Origin: Klebsormidium nitens
Lineage: Eukaryota; Plantae; Klebsormidiophyceae
DNA: 64,000 nt
Direction of reading: 5' to 3'
Assembly: GCA_000708835.1 (NCBI GenBank)
Contig: DF237305.1
Span: 31,452-95,451 of the forward strand
Part shown: piece by piece, positions 28,456 to 37,648 of the stretch
How positions within the stretch are numbered: position 1 is the first letter of the stretch
Layout: every line of letters begins with the position of its first letter
The notes under the pieces: generated by a model
What the model saw: the letters and a program-made list of their open reading frames with translations, nothing else
The model's database searches: none
What the model was told of the DNA's origin: nothing
Program-made: the position numbers and the translations under genes

Positions 28456-29098
28456 TATCCTTGAGATGAGGCACACCTCCTGTGAGATGACCAGCAGCGT
28501 TGGCGGTCCCGGTTGCAAATCTGGTTTCTGGCCAAATTTTCTAGTCAATCAGCAAAGCTGCCTATTCAGATGTGTGACATCCGAGGGCAATGTTAACGTA
28601 CCGTGGCAAGGAAGAGGAGGAGCTCAGACTGCTGTGCTCCTGGCCTCCAACCTGAGGACTGGCAGTGGGGTGGGGGCCGGCTTGAAGTTGAAGAACCAGC
28701 ACTGGCAGCAGACGACCACCATTTCTTTGCAAATGTCGCCTTTGTCAGATGAAACTAGATATGCGCACAATTGACCAAGCAAGCTCTCAAGAGTTCCATT
28801 GGCTGGCAGACACCCTCCAAACTTGAGACTGAGCTCGATTTGGGTCAATCGAACGGCTCACAGTTGTCTGGGCATTGAGTCCTGAATGACATGGTCCAAT
28901 GCTGATACCAATTGAAATGTACAATTTCAATGTACTGTCAGTAATTCTAATAGCGCTAGCCTCATCCTTCATGTACGGTAGTACCGTAGGCAGTACCAAC
29001 ATTCCTACAGCTAGCTTACAATGTACTGTACATTCCTCCTGCATTGCACGAGTTTGCACCATTTTGGAAGTTGGGCCAGCATTCTGGCAGTGGCAGCC

Positions 29099-32000
29099 AT
29101 GGTGGCCGCCACCTGTGCGAGGCTGCAGCCAGCTATTCTGCGCGGCTTTGAAAGTACAAAGCTCTCTCCTGTGAATGGTGAGGCTGCGGTTAGTCAGGCA
29201 TATGCATATGCATATTCTGGTTGCGATACAGAGGAACAGTAGCTGCCATTGAGCAATACCCACTTTCCATATGGTGCACCTGACAGCTCACTTTCTGGTG
29301 GTCTGATATCCAACGCGGTTTCAAAACTCAGCAATGCTGCGCAGAAGTGCTGGCGCATCTTCCTCGCTTGAAGAACTGAGTATGATTGGAAGTACTGCAC
29401 TAACGCTTTGACGCCAACTCGCTTATAGGTGGCCCCGGCCAGCGGCAGGCACTCGCTGTGCCCCGCAGGTCAAGGAACTCGTGGTCCAGACTGCATTCCA
29501 GATGCATCCGTGCAGCCAAGGCTGTTGTAGAACCTGGGCCAACGGCTGACTGCAGTGACCAACAAAGATGGACTTCCAACCGCTTCGGCCCCTCACGCAG
29601 GGAGCTTCTGGTCGCCACCACGGGAGGGCTGATTGGACTTCAAACAAATGGTTGGAACTTGCCCCTCTGATGGTTGCTGGGCGCACCTCTTGATATGATC
29701 ACTCCTGCTTAAGTGGGGGCCATTGCCCTGATGCTGAAAGAGATCATCGAAGAAAATGGAGTTTTTGAGGGGCATGCCCTATGTCGTTGCTGACATATGT
29801 CCCACTCCGTCGATTGGTGCAGTTGCTGAAGCCCAACCAAAGTCGCTGTATGGATTCACCGTCAAGTACAAGGAGGAGGACCTTTCGTTGGGGAAATACA
29901 AGAACATGGTACGAAGAACAACGAGCTTTTCAGAGATTCGTCAAGGACACTTTCTTGACCGGACACCCCATGTGTTATGAAATCTCAACCTTTGCCTGAA
30001 AGATGTGGGAGTTCCAAAAGAGAGGCTGCGACTGTATTCTTTCCTCTTGTTCAGGCCCGCTACTTACAGCGCCTTGTCCTTGTCTGTGCAGGTTTCGGTC
30101 GTTCTCAACATAGCATCTGCGTGACCCCTGCAAAACGTGAACTATCCGGGTAGGCCATGCCTGGAAAGCAGGGGTACTGTGGCTGCGCACTTCTTGTATT
30201 TGTATGTTAAACCTGGAAGTCTGGTTCACACAGAAGCTTGTGATGCTTCTTTTTTGTAGACTTGGAATGAACTTTCCACCAGGGGACGTCGCGTGGCTTA
30301 GTTTGAGGTAACCACAGGTTCTCAGCCAATGTTTCTCCTTGCCAGGTCTTCGCTACTTGTTCAACAAGTACAAAGATCAGGTATGGAAACCCAACACAAC
30401 ATGCAACTTGAGTTCAGAGTATTCATGGCCATTCAAAATTCACCAGCTTCTTGGTGGATGGGTGTCACAAGAGGGGCAGGGGCGTTCTCAAGCAGCCGAA
30501 CGTATCCCAAGACTCGTAACTTGTCATTGTCTTTGGACCCTCATTCAGCGTGTTTGGTCAATCTAGTAAACAGGGACGAGTGGTGCCGTTTGTTAGGCCC
30601 TTGCACGGCCTGTTTTATATCTATACCATTTTTAAGCAGTGGTGCATCGGCCTGCAGGGGTTCGCGCTTCTTGCTTTCCCATGCAATCAGGTACGATCGA
30701 ACACCTGTATTGTCTTTTAGTGACGAACAGATCCGTTGGCACTAAAAGGAGGTTCTGGCATTTGAATCAGCATAAGACTCTGTTCCCAAAACTTTTTGAA
30801 GGGCGAGGTTGGCTTTTATTCAGCTTCTTCGATAAGAAAAGGGCTGGTAGTTCTCCAGAAAGCTACCTCGAAGCATTTGAACCGGGTCCTGGGCCGTCGA
30901 GCTTACTTCGTCTCAGCCTACTGACCGCCCTCGATCTCTATGTCCGTCAGTTCGGAGGCCAGGCTCCAGGCAGCAGCGACGAAGAACGGGATTACGCATA
31001 CTACAAGTTCGGCTTTGAGGTGAGCATCTATTCGCTTCCAGCACCTTCTCTAACATCTTGTAACACGAGTGCTGTGACGCAAGGACTGAACTGCTCAGGT
31101 CCTGGATAGCAAACAACATCAATCGAATATTTGGAACACCGCTGAAAATATTTGCGGATACTTCTGCTCATTCTGCTCGAACTCCGCCTGACCCCGTATC
31201 CTTTCTTCCGCTCATGACAGTTCCCCGTCTTCGACAAGGTGAGCCTGGTTGCCGAAGTTGTTGATGCTGCTCATCCACGGCCTCGGTATGGCCCATACGG
31301 GTGGGTCTTGCACGAGCGCGCCGCATGTTCGCTGCGATTTCAGCGCCCTCGTGGTGCGAAGGCAACCATGCTGCCCGTAGATTGTTAGGATGTGCTGAGG
31401 TTGTCGCTCTGCCATATGCGCTCGATTTCGGATGGTAGCTGCTGGAGGGGCGATCATGCGTCCGCTGTCGCCTCTGGGGCAGATCGACGTAAAGGGTCCT
31501 GCGATGTCACCTGTGTACGACTTCCTCAAGTCGAAGCAGCCGGGCGAGATTGAATGGAACTACGTCAAGGTGGGTGCTATTGTGGACGTTGGTCGCAGAT
31601 AAGATGTACCGAGTGCCTGTCTCATGTGAGGCATAATACCCACAAGTTGACGCCTTGCTTGCTGGTGTAAGGAAAGGACAGCCGGCCGTTCGGGTTCGTC
31701 GGGCTGAAATTGTAGGAAGCGAAGGAGCAAGGCCATAAGAAGCGTCTGGGCTTTTCCCTTATTGGATATGACTACAAGGCCTTTTCTTATGCTCGTTCAG
31801 TTGTGCTCTTTCTGACTCGCACCACATGACAAGTTTACAGTTCCGCGACTCTTGTTCGAGCTGTCGCAACCTTCGGAAGCGAAGCCTTGGGCCCTTTTTG
31901 AGGTTGGTCGCACGGACATGGATCGATGCAAAAGTTGCCTTTGCGAGCGAGGACATTGAGAACTAAATCACGATCAGAGGTGATCTACTTCGTCCCGCTA

Positions 32001-32710
32001 GGTTGGAAGAGAAGCGTATAAAGTCCGACCGCAAACGAATCTGCGAACCAGTTCTCGTTTCATCGTCGTTTTACCCTGGCACGTCAAGCGAACGGAGTGT
32101 ACTTTTCTGGTGCAGTTCTTGGTGGACCGCAACGGCGTCCCGGTGCGGCGGTACAAGCCCGGCTTCGATCCCGTGGTGAGGCCCAGCCCGGAGCATGGTA
32201 TCGGCACGCAGATCCGTCCCGTGACCCTGCACTTGCTGTCCGCCCAAGCTTCCCGTCTGTCTTCACTTGACGCACATGGGAATCGTTCAGTTGTGCTGTG
32301 CCGGATCAGAGGCGGATACCATCACGATATGGATCTGCACGATGATGCCAAGCCGCTTGTCTTGAAGTAACACCGCCGCCAAATTCTCTCCTGTTCAGAA
32401 TTTCGAAGAAGATCTGGTGGCGACGCTGGCGGGAAGGTGAGCGACAGACCAGTTAGCGCTTTAGCGGATCAGGCGCGAAATGCCAACTTCAAGAGGATCA
32501 AAAGGGTTGCCAGCTGCGGCCACGTCAGCCAAATCCTTTTTGCATTGCAAGTTCCCGCACTGTTTACCGCAAAGAGGTGTAGTAATTCTGTACCAGCATG
32601 CACGTCTCAAGCCATTTCGAAGAGGTCCTTTCTGTCGTCGGCCTGAGAGGAGGTCACGTTGTCGCAGGCCCCTCCCTCCAAAGCAGCGAGTGTACCTTGG
32701 CGCGCCATAA
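29099..32710 (+). CDS. GPX: Glutathione peroxidase with in-frame UGA (selenocysteine) at the catalytic site, 12 exons, 275 aa
   Basis: Exons 29099-29177, 29429-29650, 29823-29908, 30092-30149, 30346-30380, 30658-30690, 30951-31019, 31221-31238, 31483-31569, 32116-32175, 32399-32436 and 32668-32710 (828 nt, phases consistent). Product includes KSLYGFTVK...[18 protein letters not shown][TGA 30122-30124][38 protein letters not shown]...FPVFDKIDVKG...EIEWNYVKFLVDRNGVPVRRYKP. The first two exons are less certain than the core. Confidence 0.93.
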
Positions 32711-32776
32711 GCCGGTACATGGACGCATGTTGAAGCATCGGTCGGCCTTCTGTGCTATCTCCAAAGGCTCTGTTCA

Positions 32777-32845
32777 GTCTGCATTCCCATGACGGCGGCA
32801 CTCAGCAACCCGGCAGGGAGGAGTACCACTCGACAAAGATGAGAC
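32777..32845 (+). promoter_or_regulatory. Candidate type II SECIS element in the GPX 3' UTR
   Basis: Helix I gtct(g)cat / atgagac. Core ATGAC (32789-32793) opposite CGAC (32831-32834). Helix II ggcggcactc / gagtaccact (8 of 10 pairs, two C-A mismatches). Unpaired AA at 32807-32808, 13 nt after the core. Apical mini-helix CCC-GGCA-GGG. Folded by eye only. Confidence 0.75.
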
Positions 32846-33718
32846 AGGCCAAGCACTGCCTTAGTTGCGGACGACGCATAGCATTTGGAGAGAAGCAGAG
32901 GTTGGTCGTCTGTTTGGGTGCGACACAACAGCGTGCATTTGCGTTGGCCTGCGTTTCATATTACATCATCAATTGATTGCATTTTGTTCCAAGAACATGC
33001 TCCAATTTTCGATTGGCAGCAAGACTGAGAGCCCTAATTGTTTAGTGGGGCAGCAGTGTGACTCAGTTTTTGGTTGTAACGCGATTGAATATCCATACTG
33101 ACAACTTTGGGAGCGGATCGCATATGCTGAACATTCTAGGGACCCCGCTGCCTACCTTAGTTCCGTCAAAATCTGCATTGACAGTGACATGTGTGAATCT
33201 GGAGAGTCGCAGCTTAAAATTGTCAGGAAGCGACGGTTCATGGCATGCAAAATGCAGCGATTGCGGGCACACGGTTTGTATGGCACATTTGAAGTTGGAA
33301 TTCTGCATGCCCATCGGAAAATGGATTCCATGCATTAGTTCGAAGCTATCTAGTGGTAGAATGCACACAGCATACTCACTTGAGCGACATGTGGATATGT
33401 TGCAGTCATTGGACCGGGTTGACTGAACGTGGGCATGTGCATCGGGTTCTCAAAAATCAATGATACAAAGAGAGTCGTAGCCTTCAGCCTGCAGGAGCAC
33501 GTCGACATCCTGATCTCTGGATGCGACTTGAGATGCAGTGGCATCCTGCATCAACACAATATGAGAAAGACACCCTGCCACGCTGTATAATGTCAAACTT
33601 ACAAATTCCGAACCCCTGATCGCCCAGCTATAATTCCCGCCTTCTATCTGGCCGACTACCGACTACACATTCATCAAATCACCTCTAGACCGGGTCAGGG
33701 CCGAGGGGTCCTTGCCCA

Positions 33719-36700
33719 TCACCTTCTCTGTCTGGGCTTGTATCTAAACTCTGCTAGCAGAGCAATGTGATCCGACGACCATTCGGGGCTGGGCAGGCCC
33801 GTGTCTTTCCGGAGGTCCTCCTCGTTCAGCAGCTCCAGCAGAGCCTCCGGCTGCAGCGAGTCCGCTGCACACGCAACAGCAACGCGCTCAGCATCCGCTG
33901 TGTTTGCATAACAGCTGCTCATCAGATGCCAGATCAACAGTTGCCACGACAAGAACAACAGGCTCTTCGAGCATCCGTGCCAGATAGTCGCTCATCAAGG
34001 GAAAGCTTTCCGCAAGAGTGAGAGTCACGATAACGACTCTCAGTCGAAGGCCGGTGTGTCGAGCTAAGCACTAGCCCACTCTGATTGCCCACTTAATGTG
34101 CGACAAGTGGCGGCCTTGGCCGGTGTGCCTTGCACACTCACCTGTATAGAAGATGTAATCAAGTGTCCCCAGGAAGTCTCTCGTGCAATTGGTGAAGAGG
34201 GGCTCCTGTGTAGCAGGGTCGATCTTCCGCCGGAGGGCCTCGCCGTTTGGCCCCGGGACACGCGCGAAAGCTCCGTACGCGCTCACCTGCGACGACAATG
34301 GTCTGCTCAAAGCAACGCCCTGCCACAACGTAATGCTGTGCAGCAACAGGCCTCCCAGCACCGTGCTTAGCTTCAAAGCATCATCAAAAACGATCCGTCC
34401 AGCATCTACGGTTTACACTCTTCTCCACCTACTACGCAAACGAAGCTGCAAAGTCTGATTATGCATATTCTAAAATGGTGGCGTGCCATTATCGCCATGC
34501 TCACCAGCGGCAGCTGGTGCTGCAGCTTGGTAGCCGGCCGTAGGATGCCCAGCGGGTCCGTGGCCAGCTCCGGGTGGGCGGGATCCACGCGGCCCGTCGC
34601 CAGCAACGAATGCGGGCAGCTGCACACAAATATGACAGCAATGGCATCAGTAACGCAATTTATGTAGCGGTGCTGCACTGGTATTAACAGCCGTTGTCGG
34701 TGAACGGAAGGGAGCTAGCCCCGTCCGTGTAGCCCGCGTCTTGCAAGCAGACTCCAGACTGGACGTCACCAAGTCCTCGGTTTTGACCAAGGAACAGGTT
34801 GCCCTTCCAGACTTGACAACCGCATGACCCCAAGTCGGTTACAATGTAAGAAGGACCCCAGGACCCCAACGATTTCACCCAGACCCAGAGAAAAGCTTGG
34901 CCTTCCAGCAAGCCGACCACGACAACTTCCCAAGGCCGTCCCCTCTGACTGACAAGATGAAAGACGTCCAGCCAGGAAATGAAACGGCAGCAATTGCAAG
35001 TGGTGTCGGCCACTGACCTTCCGGGGACGCTGTTGAAGTCCCCTGCGACTAGCATGGGAATGTCGGCGCTGGCCGCGATCTTCTCGAGGCCCTTGAGCAG
35101 CGTGTGCACCTGCCACAGCTTCACGTCCTTCAACTCCGGGTTGGCGTGGATGTGCGTGTTGGCCTGCAACACAACCACCACCTCTCGCCAGTGAGCCCCC
35201 ATCAATATCAGACATCCAAAGACCCAAAACGTGGATAAGCTACCCAAGAAACTGCTTTAGAAAGCAATCTAGCTCAGTAGAGTCGGCTCAGCTGGCCAGG
35301 GAAGCAGGCCAAAACCAGTCCGCCGAATGTGTTATGCCGTTCAGATCTTGGAGCTTTGACATGGCGAGCAACCAGGCATCCACAGTGCAGCATCTGGCGG
35401 CGCAGTCCTGTAGCAAGGCGGGAGGGAGTGCTGCGCTGCTGACCACGCAGAGGAGCTGCCTCTTGCTCTGCCCGGGCAGGGGCCCGTCTGCGCCCTCGTG
35501 CTCCTTGGCCTCCAGCACCACGATGAGCGCCACGTTGTCCTTGAGCAGGCGGTTGAGGGCCGCCTTCTTGGACGCGGCGGGGCCCAGCGCCTCGCTCAGG
35601 GACAGCGCGGCCTTGTTGAACTCGACCTCGTACTTCTTGACTAGCGAGAAGCGCGACTCCTTGAAGAACGTGGCACACCCGTCGATGGCGTATGACGACC
35701 CCGTGTACACCTGTAAGTTAGCAGGTGGTTTTGTTGGTTTAAGAGGAACATGGAAGGGGATTGGACACTACACGGTGGGATCAGGGGAACTTGCTTGGCG
35801 GCATCACGATTGACCGCCTAGGCCCAATGAAGACGAACGCCGAGGGCGTCAAGCATGCCAAAGTTCAGGAGCAGGGGGAACTGTCACCAAGCCATGTGTG
35901 CATAGAAGTGAGGGCGGTGGAGGGGGATGGTAAGGTTGGATTGCTGACCTGGCTCACCTCGCCGGTCTTCTTCTTGTACACGGCCGCATACCCGTGCTTC
36001 TTGAGCTCCGGAGCAAAAAACTCCTCGTAGTGATCGCTCTGGACCTGCAGCACAAGACAGGCCCTGCCTTGGTCAGGGACTAGCAAGCGCTGGGCAGCAC
36101 GAGGCAGGGAACCCTAAATTGCGTCAACCTCCCCCCAACTCTGACAGACAATAGCGTGTGCTCCAAATTCTCTTAGAAAGCTGAGGGGGCGTCCATTGTG
36201 TGGTTTGCATTGGTGCATTTGAGGTGCTGCCTGACGGCTCACCTCCTGCAGGCAGAGGATGTCCGCCCGGTAGCCCACCAGCTCCTTGAGCAGGTTCTGC
36301 TTACGGTACGCCCACGAGAGGGCCCACGGCGGGCAGTAGCTGTACATCTCGTTGGTGGCGTACAGGTCCGCCAGCACATTGTACGACACCACCGTGAAAG
36401 TCCCCGGCTTTATCAATCGCTCCCCGATCTCGGACGTGCCCTCCCCAAAGATGGACACCATCCTGCGCGGGGTGGGCGAGGGCGCGGGGATCACGCGCGA
36501 GGTGAGCAGCGTGGAGGGCGCCGCCACCGGCTGGCGCGTCTTGGCGTCCATGGGCGTGCACTCCAGCTTCAGAATGTGGCCCACGTCGTCCGAGCTCGGC
36601 GTGTAGCTCTTGCCCTGCCCCACCTCATACNNNNNNNNNNNNNNNNNNNNNNNNNNNNNNNNNNNNNNNNNNNNNNNNNNNNNNNNNNNNNNNNNNNNNN

Positions 36701-37648
36701 NNNNNNNNNNNNNNNNNNNNNNNNNNNNNNNNNNNNNNNNNNNNNNNNNNNNNNNNNNNNNNNNNNNNNNNNNNNNNNNNNNNNNNNNNNNNNNNNNNNN
36801 NNNNNNNNNNNNNNNNNNNNNNNNNNNNNNNNNNNNNNNNNNNNNNNNNNNNNNNNNNNNNNNNNNNNNNNNNNNNNNNNNNNNNNNNNNNNNNNNNNNN
36901 NNNNNNNNNNNNNNNNNNNNNNNNNNNNNNNNNNNNNNNNNNNNNNNNNNNNNNNNNNNNNNNNNNNNNNNNNNNNNNNNNNNNNNNNNNNNNNNNNNNN
37001 NNNNNNNNNNNGGGGCCGGATACGCGGCCCCGTTTGGCAGCCCTATGATGCTGCGCCGCGTGGCGTGGCTGCTCCCAGGAGGCCCCGTGCCAAAGAGCTC
37101 CTCCTCCTCTGGTGCGGTGTTGTTGCCATTCTGGTCCTTGGCGGGCGCGGCGGCCGCGCGTGCATGCAGCTCCTTGTGATTGCGCCACGCGGCGGCAAAG
37201 CACTGGGGGCTGCAGTGGTAGCTCTTGGCAGCCGGCAGCTTGGCCTTCACGCACAGCAGGCACTGCAGCGTGGCCACCTCGCTTGGGTGGACGCTGCACA
37301 CAGCCACCCGCTTCTCGTTCTTAACCCGTAGCCTGCAGGAATGGGAGTAGTTGAAGTTAGCGTCCCCTGCCCTTGAGCGATGTAAAATGCAACTCCAGCT
37401 GGCAGCATGTAATGAGGGTTCGCTGCGAACCAGTGCCTGAACAAAGCTCTGCAAAGATGAACATTTTCCAGACCGAGTCCTTGTTCTTACCATTTGCACT
37501 GAAGGTAGTAGCCTTGCACGGGCGCGCCCTCTGGAATGTCATCGGTAGTGATGCTGTTGTCTGGCTTGCGCAGAAGCACGTACGGGGTCAATTCACAGCC
37601 CGCGATCGGAATGTCCGAAGGCAAGTGTGTTCTCAGAACGGACAGCAT
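33719..37648 (-). CDS. CCR4: Carbon catabolite repressor 4 homolog (plant CCR4a/b-type EEP deadenylase of the CCR4-NOT complex)
   Basis: Starts MLSVLRTHLPSDIPIAGCELTPYVLLRKPD. Includes CSVHPSEVATLQCLLC...SYHCSPQCF, FTVVSYNVLADLYA, ADILCLQEVQSDHYEEFF, IDGCATFF, NTHIHANPELKDVKLWQVHTLLKGLEKIAASADIPMLVAGDFNSVPG, FTNCTRDFLGTLDYIFYT and LPSPEWSSDHIALLAEFR, then a stop at 33719-33721. Confidence 0.96.
36631..37011. other. Assembly gap (N run) inside CCR4
   Basis: 381 consecutive N. Confidence 0.99.

What the first reader, a model, noticed from the sequence alone, without database searches (positions are those of the whole stretch)
30092..30149. In-frame UGA at the GPX catalytic position: a selenoprotein in a plant-lineage genome
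Seen: exon 30092-30149 reads V-S-V-V-L-N-I-A-S-A-TGA-P-L-Q-N-V-N-Y-P, and the frame continues through eight more intact exons with the rest of the GPX tetrad (Gln in FGGQAPG; Trp-Asn in IEWNY). Established: this position is Sec in animal and chlorophyte GPXs (NVASxU) and Cys in land plants, which lack Sec machinery. Inference: Sec140 of a true selenoprotein. Standard gene finders would truncate it or invent an intron at the GC|GT just before the UGA. It marks retention of the Sec trait in this streptophyte-like genome.
Basis: partly seen in the sequence, partly recalled or inferred. Interest (0 to 1): 0.85.

Follow-up and report, generated by a model that had tools for sequence, protein, structure and literature searches.

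The report
Selenocysteine glutathione peroxidase gene, Klebsormidium
This green alga's gene for a peroxide-destroying enzyme uses the stop signal UGA to put the selenium amino acid selenocysteine at its active site. Both this way of reading UGA and this enzyme family were already reported in green algae, and selenoproteins have been reported in this species.

Summary
Exon 30092-30149 (+) carries an in-frame TGA (30122-30124, codon 140) where GPX enzymes have their catalytic Cys/Sec.

Spliced RNA contigs from four studies contain this exon unchanged, flanked by GT..AG junctions. They define a 12-exon, 275-codon gene with no other internal stop.

Evidence that the TGA is a conserved Sec codon:
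- A metagenome pattern allowing TGA, TGC or TGT found 55 loci, all with TGA.
- Six related transcripts also keep TGA.
- Against the closest relative, the 133 codons after the TGA give dN/dS about 0.04.

A SECIS element lies 67-135 nt after the stop (32777-32845). A covariance model built only from the relatives' 3'UTR elements ranks it first in the 64 kb window (25.6 bits, E about 0.0015). Rfam does not detect it.

The gene is the orthologue of Chlamydomonas GPX2 (Cre08.g358525), a known selenoprotein.

Two papers already report a complete Sec machinery and two selenoproteins in Klebsormidium nitens, so the trait is not new. I could not tell whether this gene is one of those two.

This scan noted the same stretch in another window and other selenoprotein genes elsewhere in this genome.

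One extra lead is a twin-arginine presequence conserved across the subfamily, which suggests thylakoid-lumen targeting.

The parts
29099..29177 (+). Exon 1: start codon and start of the transit peptide
   Evidence: First ATG of the transcript. RNA contigs start at 29049. Joint 29176>29428 is GT..AG.
29429..29650 (+). Exon 2: presequence with a twin-arginine motif (RR = 29596-29601) and a hydrophobic run
   Evidence: Joints. Translation. The two Arg are the only invariant columns in the 13-sequence alignment A7.
29823..29908 (+). Exon 3: A-E-A putative cleavage motif and the start of the mature GPX domain (SLYGFTVKY)
   Evidence: Aligns with the pre-Sec parts of orthologues.
30092..30149 (+). 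Exon 4: active-site exon N-I-A-S-A-U-P-L-Q-N-V-N-Y-P
   Evidence: Both flanking joints appear in all four runs, with the whole 58-nt exon between them.
30122..30124 (+). TGA = Sec codon 140 (peroxidatic residue)
   Evidence: Opposite BtuE Cys37. TGA in 55/55 metagenome loci and in six related transcripts.
30346..30380 (+). Exon 5
30658..30690 (+). Exon 6 (GFALLAFPCNQ)
30951..31019 (+). Exon 7 (FGGQAPG..., catalytic Gln)
   Evidence: tblastn E 1.7e-10 to orthologue L029. Joints.
31221..31238 (+). Exon 8 (18 nt, FPVFDK)
   Evidence: Inferred from 18 letters of record 9 of run X14 that lie between the two neighbouring exons. GT..AG context.
31483..31569 (+). Exon 9 (IDVKG...IEWNYVK, catalytic Trp-Asn)
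   Evidence: All three PDB hits are GPX chains. tblastn E 2e-5.
32116..32175 (+). Exon 10 (FLVDRNGVPVRRYKPGFDPV)
   Evidence: 23 of 24 PDB hits are GPX chains or designs on GPX4, best E 0.006. tblastn E 4e-6.
32399..32436 (+). Exon 11
32668..33232 (+). Exon 12: last 13 codons, TAA stop at 32708-32710, and a 3'UTR of about 520 nt
   Evidence: Contigs cover 32666-33232. Translation.
32777..32845 (+). SECIS element. Helix I 32777-32785 / 32838-32845; AUGA 32789-32792; helix II 32794-32806 / 32818-32830; unpaired AA 32807-32808; 3' GA 32832-32833.
   Evidence: Only pattern hit in the 3'UTR. Top hit in the window for model R3, which was built from six orthologous elements without this one: 25.6 bits, E 0.0015. 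Helix II covaries.

Best explanation
This is an expressed nuclear gene of a streptophyte alga, Klebsormidium nitens according to earlier scan notes. It encodes a GPX4-like glutathione peroxidase whose peroxidatic residue is selenocysteine, encoded by UGA codon 140.

Shown: the mRNA is spliced from 12 exons and keeps the UGA. A SECIS stem-loop lies in the 3'UTR about 80 nt after the TAA stop.

Inferred from the standard eukaryotic pathway: SBP2 binds the SECIS and recruits eEFSec carrying Sec-tRNA(Sec), which reads the UGA as Sec instead of terminating. This yields a 275-residue precursor.

The mature enzyme has Sec, Gln (FGGQ), Trp and Asn (WNY) as its catalytic tetrad and no resolving Cys. 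Inferred: it reduces peroxides through a selenenic-acid cycle that is re-reduced by glutathione or another thiol.

The gene is the orthologue of Chlamydomonas reinhardtii GPX2. It belongs to a green-algal subfamily marked by U-P-L-Q-N-x-N-Y-P after the active-site Ser.
For: - Sequence and frame.
- Mature mRNA with the UGA in contigs of four studies, all junctions GT..AG, no variant letters.
- GPX identity: exon-wise PDB hits; colinear alignment to BtuE with TGA opposite Cys37; tblastn of orthologue pieces to the exons; Pfam GSHPx on the orthologues' post-Sec pieces, E 6.5e-21 to 1.4e-11.
- Conservation of TGA: 55/55 metagenome loci although TGC/TGT were allowed; six related transcripts.
- Translation past the UGA: pS 0.59, pN 0.042 and dN/dS 0.04 over 133 post-UGA codons against L057.
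- SECIS: pattern scan gives about 0.012 chance hits expected per UTR. The orthologues carry the same element at the same place. Model R3 puts the K. nitens element first in the window. For helix II, 70% of cells pair against 36-48% in the slid controls, and 8 of 11 pairs change on both sides. The L059 orthologue's element matches Rfam SECIS_1 over its full length at 22.8 bits.
- Machinery: PMC6627142 lists K. nitens eEFSec, PSTK, SBP2, SecS and SPS and two selenoproteins. PMC13578239 states that tRNA-Sec is retained in streptophyte algae.
- Orthology: PMC9404770 names Cre08.g358525 as Sec-containing GPX2, and its NCBI model P0044 is among the homologues.
Against: - Rfam finds no SECIS family in the K. 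nitens 3'UTR at any threshold tried.
- Helix II has four non-standard positions out of 13: two C.A and a tandem A.G/G.A.
- The 79-nt region folds no better than shuffled sequence (z = +0.30).
- No protein-level evidence (mass spectrometry, 75Se) is available here.
- The organism's name rests on earlier scan notes, not on a test of mine.
Confidence: 0.93

Rival explanations
1. The UGA is read through by a near-cognate tRNA (Trp, Cys or Arg) or is leaky, so the full-length protein carries no selenium. The 3'UTR stem-loop would then be a decayed relic.
For: The K. nitens SECIS is weaker than those of its relatives: no Rfam hit, four non-standard positions in helix II, and no thermodynamic excess. 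K. nitens lives subaerially and has a small selenoproteome.
Against: TGA is kept in every relative while synonymous sites are near saturation. A Cys codon is one mutation away and was never seen. The SECIS core AUGA/GA, the unpaired AA and helix I are intact, and the element scores first in the window with the orthologue model. The Sec machinery is reported for the species.
Confidence: 0.03
2. The gene is a pseudogene or nonsense allele. Translation stops at codon 140, giving a 139-residue fragment or mRNA decay.
For: A plain reading of TGA as stop. ORF callers split the relatives' transcripts at this codon.
Against: dN/dS is 0.04 over the 133 codons after the TGA. Eight downstream exons are intact and correctly spliced. 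Spliced contigs have greater word depth than the intron-containing ones. The same TGA is present across distant green algae.
Confidence: 0.02
3. The TGA is an assembly or sequencing error for TGC/TGT, or it is removed from the mature mRNA by an alternative splice.
For: None found.
Against: Contigs of four independent studies show the exon with no differing letter, and no joint skips the codon. The orthologues have TGA.
Confidence: 0.01

Closest known systems
Chlamydomonas reinhardtii GPX2 (Cre08.g358525 / CHLRE_08g358525v5), a Sec-containing glutathione peroxidase
   Same: Same subfamily: it appears among the homologues of the marine subfamily member L018 (61% identity to that query). The RR-hydrophobic presequence is conserved. 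It shares the VNYPGLR.L..KY and FPCNQFGGQAPG motifs. It is named as a selenoprotein in PMC9404770 and PMC3095285.
   Different: The chlorophyte proteins carry a loop insertion before IEWNY and a C-terminal tail with two Cys (..ECxxHPGRKVCKV). The K. nitens protein ends ..PLPPKQRVYLGAP and has no Cys there. The public Chlamydomonas model omits the Sec segment.
Mammalian GPX4 (phospholipid hydroperoxide GPX; e.g. PDB 2OBI, 6HN3)
   Same: Sec enzyme with a Sec-Gln-Trp-Asn tetrad and a SECIS in the 3'UTR. Exon 10 hits GPX4 chains.
   Different: GPX4 has U-G-x-T after Sec, whereas here it is U-P-L-Q. The targeting is different. Identity is low.
Land-plant Cys-GPX (e.g. poplar GPX5, PDB 2P5Q)
   Same: Same fold and motifs. 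Exon 9 aligns to 2P5Q residues 105-137, including W-N.
   Different: Land plants have Cys at the peroxidatic position and, from my own knowledge of the family, a resolving Cys used with thioredoxin. Here the peroxidatic residue is Sec, and the position I take to be equivalent reads Tyr (not tested).
Eukaryotic SECIS element (Rfam RF00031 SECIS_1)
   Same: In the 3'UTR. AUGA...GA quartet, unpaired AA(A), helix I and helix II. The orthologous L059 element aligns to the whole SECIS_1 model.
   Different: The K. nitens copy does not reach any Rfam threshold, and its helix II has four non-standard positions.

Membership tests
Glutathione peroxidase (Pfam PF00255 GSHPx) | Sequence match to the GSHPx domain | tested here: met
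   The K. nitens exons alone are too short for Pfam. They align colinearly to orthologue pieces (E 1e-10 to 4e-6), and those pieces match PF00255 at E 6.5e-21 to 1.4e-11. The PDB hits of exons 9 and 10 are GPX chains.
Glutathione peroxidase (Pfam PF00255 GSHPx) | Peroxidatic Sec/Cys in the N-[VI]-A-S-x-[UC] motif | tested here: met
   N-I-A-S-A-TGA. The TGA lies opposite BtuE Cys37.
Glutathione peroxidase (Pfam PF00255 GSHPx) | Rest of the catalytic tetrad: Gln, Trp, Asn | tested here: met
   Gln of FGGQAPG aligns with the Gln of FLEQEPG in BtuE. W-N of IEWNY aligns with W-N of poplar GPX5.
Glutathione peroxidase (Pfam PF00255 GSHPx) | Thioredoxin-like fold | not tested
No structure was predicted.
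Eukaryotic selenoprotein gene | In-frame UGA present in the mature mRNA | tested here: met
   Spliced contigs of four studies.
Eukaryotic selenoprotein gene | UGA conserved in orthologues and/or aligned with Cys in homologues | tested here: met
   55/55 metagenome loci and 6/6 related transcripts have TGA. Cys at that place in BtuE; land-plant GPX also have Cys there (established knowledge).
Eukaryotic selenoprotein gene | Coding constraint downstream of the UGA | tested here: met
   dN/dS 0.04 over 133 codons.
Eukaryotic selenoprotein gene | SECIS element in the 3'UTR | tested here: met
   32777-32845. Pattern scan, orthologue covariance model at 25.6 bits and E 0.0015, covariation.
Eukaryotic selenoprotein gene | Sec actually incorporated (75Se labelling or mass spectrometry) | not testable with these tools
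   Needs an experiment.
Eukaryotic selenoprotein gene | Genome encodes tRNA-Sec, PSTK, SecS, SPS, eEFSec and SBP2 | not tested
   None of these lie in this window, and ARAGORN finds no tRNA here. They are reported for K. nitens in PMC6627142.
Rfam SECIS_1 (RF00031) | Score at or above the gathering threshold (35 bits) | tested here: not met
   No hit in the window. The L059 orthologue reaches 22.8 bits. The marine orthologues' clear SECIS elements are also missed, so the model is insensitive for green algae.
cpTat (twin-arginine) thylakoid-lumen precursor | Bipartite presequence: transit peptide, then RR, a hydrophobic core and an AxA site | tested here: inconclusive
   The motif is present, and the two Arg are the only invariant columns among 13 presequences. 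Pfam shows no TAT_signal hit on exon 2. No localisation data exist.

The most novel reading that the evidence does not exclude
The GPX2-type Sec-GPX subfamily may be a thylakoid-lumen selenoenzyme imported by the chloroplast twin-arginine (Tat) pathway. Its marks are U-P-L-Q after the active-site Ser, no resolving Cys in the streptophyte members, and an invariant RR-hydrophobic-AxA presequence. It runs from Mamiellophyceae-like marine algae through Chlamydomonas to Klebsormidium and Mesotaenium. If so, green algae keep a selenium-dependent peroxidase next to photosystem II that land plants lost together with the Sec machinery. In addition, the K. nitens selenoproteome may be larger than the published count of two: this scan now lists GPX plus at least three other candidates.
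Probability: 0.4. Interest if true: 0.55.

Novelty: new member of a known kind. Interest (0 to 1): 0.33.

Why it matters
The result gives a fully evidenced gene model (12 exons, Sec140, SECIS) for a locus that automatic annotation gets wrong in its orthologues. The public models in at least six other green algae, including the Chlamydomonas reference, skip the Sec segment.

It places a Chlamydomonas-type seleno-GPX inside the streptophytes. That corrects the 2010 inference that seleno-GPX were lost before or during streptophyte evolution (PMC3095285), and it agrees with later genome surveys.

It does not change the picture of Sec evolution, because retention of the trait in streptophyte algae is published. 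The conserved twin-arginine presequence is a cheap, testable lead on where this enzyme works.

Tried and rejected
- Rfam for SECIS at the gathering threshold and three permissive settings: nothing. I judged this uninformative because Rfam also misses the clear SECIS elements of the marine orthologues.
- Pfam on single exons and PDB searches with exons 3 and 7: the queries were too short and gave nothing.
- tblastn with E. coli BtuE: only two weak exon hits, so I replaced it with piecewise alignment and with algal orthologues.
- Covariance models R1 and R2, built from the marine GUGA-type SECIS: too sequence-specific. They miss L018, L041 and the window, so I replaced them with R3 built from close relatives.
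- The search of protein representatives with exon 2: no hit.
- K. nitens' own public protein model was not recovered, so I could not see how this locus itself is annotated.
- The two published K. nitens selenoproteins are named only in figures that are not held. Dayer et al. 2008 is not held.
- Thermodynamic support for the SECIS was rejected: z = +0.30.

Full report
**Observation.** window:30092-30149:+ reads V-S-V-V-L-N-I-A-S-A-TGA-P-L-Q-N-V-N-Y-P. I laid contigs of four runs from four studies on 29000-33400. All of them carry GT..AG joints, so they are RNA. They bracket exactly this 58-nt exon (joints 29907>30091 and 30148>30345), and no differing letter is reported anywhere on the stretch.

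The joints, with splice-site context, give 12 exons:
- 29099-29177
- 29429-29650
- 29823-29908
- 30092-30149
- 30346-30380
- 30658-30690
- 30951-31019
- 31221-31238
- 31483-31569
- 32116-32175
- 32399-32436
- 32668 to about 33232

Exon 8 (18 nt) is inferred from 18 letters of one contig that lie between its two neighbours. Frame bookkeeping exon by exon gives 275 codons, a TAA stop at 32708-32710, and a single internal stop, the TGA at codon 140. No joint removes that codon. Lower-depth contigs that run through introns 5, 6, 9 and 11 look like unspliced precursor.

**Family.** Single exons are too short for Pfam. The PDB hits of exon 9 are all GPX chains: yeast Hyr1, poplar GPX5 and a trypanosomatid GPX. 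For exon 10, 23 of 24 hits are GPX chains or designs on GPX4, best E 0.006. Piecewise alignment to E. coli BtuE (L001:5559-6110:-) is colinear. It puts V-S-V-V-L-N-I-A-S on BtuE 27-35, so the TGA falls on Cys37 of the N-V-A-S-K-C-G motif. The Gln of FGGQAPG and the Trp-Asn of IEWNY align with the corresponding residues of BtuE and poplar GPX5.

**Relatives.** I searched metagenome contigs for a degenerate DNA pattern encoding N-[IV]-A-S-x-[TGA/TGC/TGT]-P-L-Q-N-x-N-Y. It found 55 loci, mostly marine, GC-rich and without introns. Every one has TGA, never a Cys codon, with an open frame of about 130 codons before it and 166-170 after. Their post-Sec pieces match Pfam GSHPx at E 6.5e-21 to 1.4e-11. 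They also hit the K. nitens exons colinearly at E 1e-10 (exon 7), 2e-5 (exon 9) and 4e-6 (exon 10).

A protein search with one such piece shows the subfamily across green algae. Public models of Chlamydomonas reinhardtii (CHLRE_08g358525v5), Tetradesmus, Chlorella ohadii, C. vulgaris and Myrmecia jump over the A-S-x-U-P-L-Q segment. Two metagenomic calls read the TGA as W. Many transcript ORFs start just after the TGA. A Mesotaenium endlicherianum model (ME000591S08508) also omits the Sec exon. PMC9404770 names Cre08.g358525 as the Sec-containing GPX2 of Chlamydomonas, so the K. nitens gene is its orthologue.

Six closer relatives were fetched as transcript contigs (L057-L064). All read ..[LMV]-N-[IV]-A-S-[AE]-TGA-P-L-Q-N-V-N-Y-P-G-L-R-Y-L.. 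with the same frame on both sides. Against the closest (L057), the 133 codons after the TGA have pS 0.59, pN 0.042 and dN/dS 0.04. That region is therefore translated and constrained, while the TGA itself has been kept through near-saturating synonymous change.

**SECIS.** Rfam reports nothing in the window or the 3'UTR. It also reports nothing in 18 marine loci whose SECIS elements are obvious by eye, so its silence carries little weight here.

My own scan used a SECISearch-like pattern, with the pattern recalled from memory. It finds one candidate in the 3'UTR:
- helix I 32777-32785 / 32838-32845
- a 3-nt internal loop
- AUGA 32789-32792
- 13-nt helix II arms with four non-standard positions (two C.A and a tandem A.G/G.A)
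- unpaired AA 32807-32808
- a CCC/GGG mini-stem
- C-G-A-C 32831-32834

At that stringency the whole window has four hits on both strands, so about 0.012 are expected in a 522-nt UTR. The local minimum-energy fold takes this shape but is no more stable than shuffled sequence (z +0.30).

The six related transcripts carry the same architecture 80-165 nt after their stops: AUGA(C/U), helix, AAA, helix, (U/C)GA. A covariance model built from those six alone (A5, R3) ranks 32773-32850 (+) first in the 64 kb window on both strands. It scores 25.6 bits with a rough E of 0.0015, and the next hits have E 0.46 and 0.79 and lack the helix.

On the seven-sequence alignment, 70% of helix II cells pair against 36-48% when the partner is slid. 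Eight of 11 pairs change on both sides, and 9 of 500 shuffles reach the covariation score. The best-formed orthologous element (L059) aligns to the whole of Rfam SECIS_1 at 22.8 bits, below the gathering score of 35. I conclude that the K. nitens element is a genuine, somewhat weakened member of this SECIS lineage.

**Machinery and prior knowledge.** Earlier notes of this scan name the genome as Klebsormidium nitens. I did not verify the name independently. The C-terminal tail shared with Mesotaenium and absent from chlorophytes does fit a streptophyte.

PMC6627142 reports for K. nitens a complete Sec machinery, with eEFSec, PSTK, SBP2, SecS and SPS predictions on named scaffolds, and two selenoproteins. 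PMC7539508 also finds two. PMC13578239 states that tRNA-Sec is retained in streptophyte algae. The families of the two published selenoproteins appear only in figures that I could not read.

Notes of this scan list at least three other K. nitens selenoprotein candidates: a membrane selenoprotein, a deiodinase-like one and a small one (unchecked by me). If those hold, the published count is too low, and this GPX may or may not be among the published two. PMC3095285 (2010) had concluded that seleno-GPX were lost before or during streptophyte evolution. This gene shows the loss came later.

**Mechanism.** Shown: a spliced mRNA with UGA140 and a 3'UTR SECIS, conservation of both, and coding constraint past the UGA. 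Inferred from the standard eukaryotic pathway: SBP2 and eEFSec deliver Sec-tRNA(Sec) to UGA140. The enzyme then cycles between selenol and selenenic acid. Because the mature protein has only one Cys (in FPCNQ) and none at the resolving position, it is re-reduced by an external thiol.

**Left out.** All searches used single exons or natural sequences of relatives by reference.

**Verdict.** The observation and the Sec interpretation are confirmed with high confidence. The kind is known and the trait is already published for this species, so interest is modest. The conserved twin-arginine presequence, for which I found no paper, is the most novel lead.

Noticed in passing
window 29596-29601 (RR), 29602-29650 and 29823-29833; alignment A7: The presequence reads ..S-R-R-E-L-L-V-A-T-T-G-G-L-I-G-L-Q-T-N-V-A-E-A | Q-P-K... 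Across 13 diverse members of the subfamily, including Chlamydomonas GPX2, the two Arg are the only invariant columns. A hydrophobic run and an AxA follow. This looks like a chloroplast transit peptide plus a Tat thylakoid-lumen signal. I found no paper on a lumenal or Tat-targeted algal GPX.
   Followed up: partly
P0044, P0025, P0041, P0088, P0015, P0052, P0122: Public gene models of the orthologues jump over the Sec-containing segment. This holds for C. reinhardtii CHLRE_08g358525v5, Tetradesmus obliquus, Chlorella ohadii, C. vulgaris, Myrmecia bisecta, a JGI 'Astpho2' model and Mesotaenium endlicherianum. Two metagenomic calls (P0010, P0012) translate the TGA as W.
   Followed up: partly
window 32668-32707; P0093, P0122 versus P0044, P0025, P0009: Chlorophyte orthologues end in a tail with two Cys (..ECxxHPGRKVCKV..). 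K. nitens, L057 and Mesotaenium end ..PLPxKxRxxLGAP with no Cys. The mature K. nitens protein has a single Cys (FPCNQ) and no resolving Cys, so the reductant may differ between the two groups.
   Followed up: no
L002-L056: Most marine (Mamiellophyceae-like) members have FPANQFGCQAPG, with a Cys next to the catalytic Gln. Their SECIS cores read GUGA or AUGA, and the near-identical elements of L007 and L006 differ at just that base. Rfam SECIS models miss all of them at the gathering threshold.
   Followed up: partly
window 30352-30684, 30661-30976, 31540-32143, 32408-32695: Lower-depth RNA contigs run through introns 5, 6, 9 and 11. This is unspliced precursor or intron retention beside the fully spliced form.
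   Followed up: no
window about 36.6-37.0 kb, inside ORFs 36114-37499 (-): A run of N (assembly gap) interrupts a neighbouring gene on the minus strand that looks like a CCR4/nocturnin-type endonuclease-exonuclease-phosphatase. At 38.5-40 kb (+) lie exons of a proteasome-type AAA ATPase. Both identifications are by eye only.
   Followed up: no
scan notes s1-270329, s1-324293, s1-290830 (other pieces of this genome): Together with this GPX, the scan now lists at least four selenoprotein candidates in K. nitens. The two genome surveys each report two.
   Followed up: no
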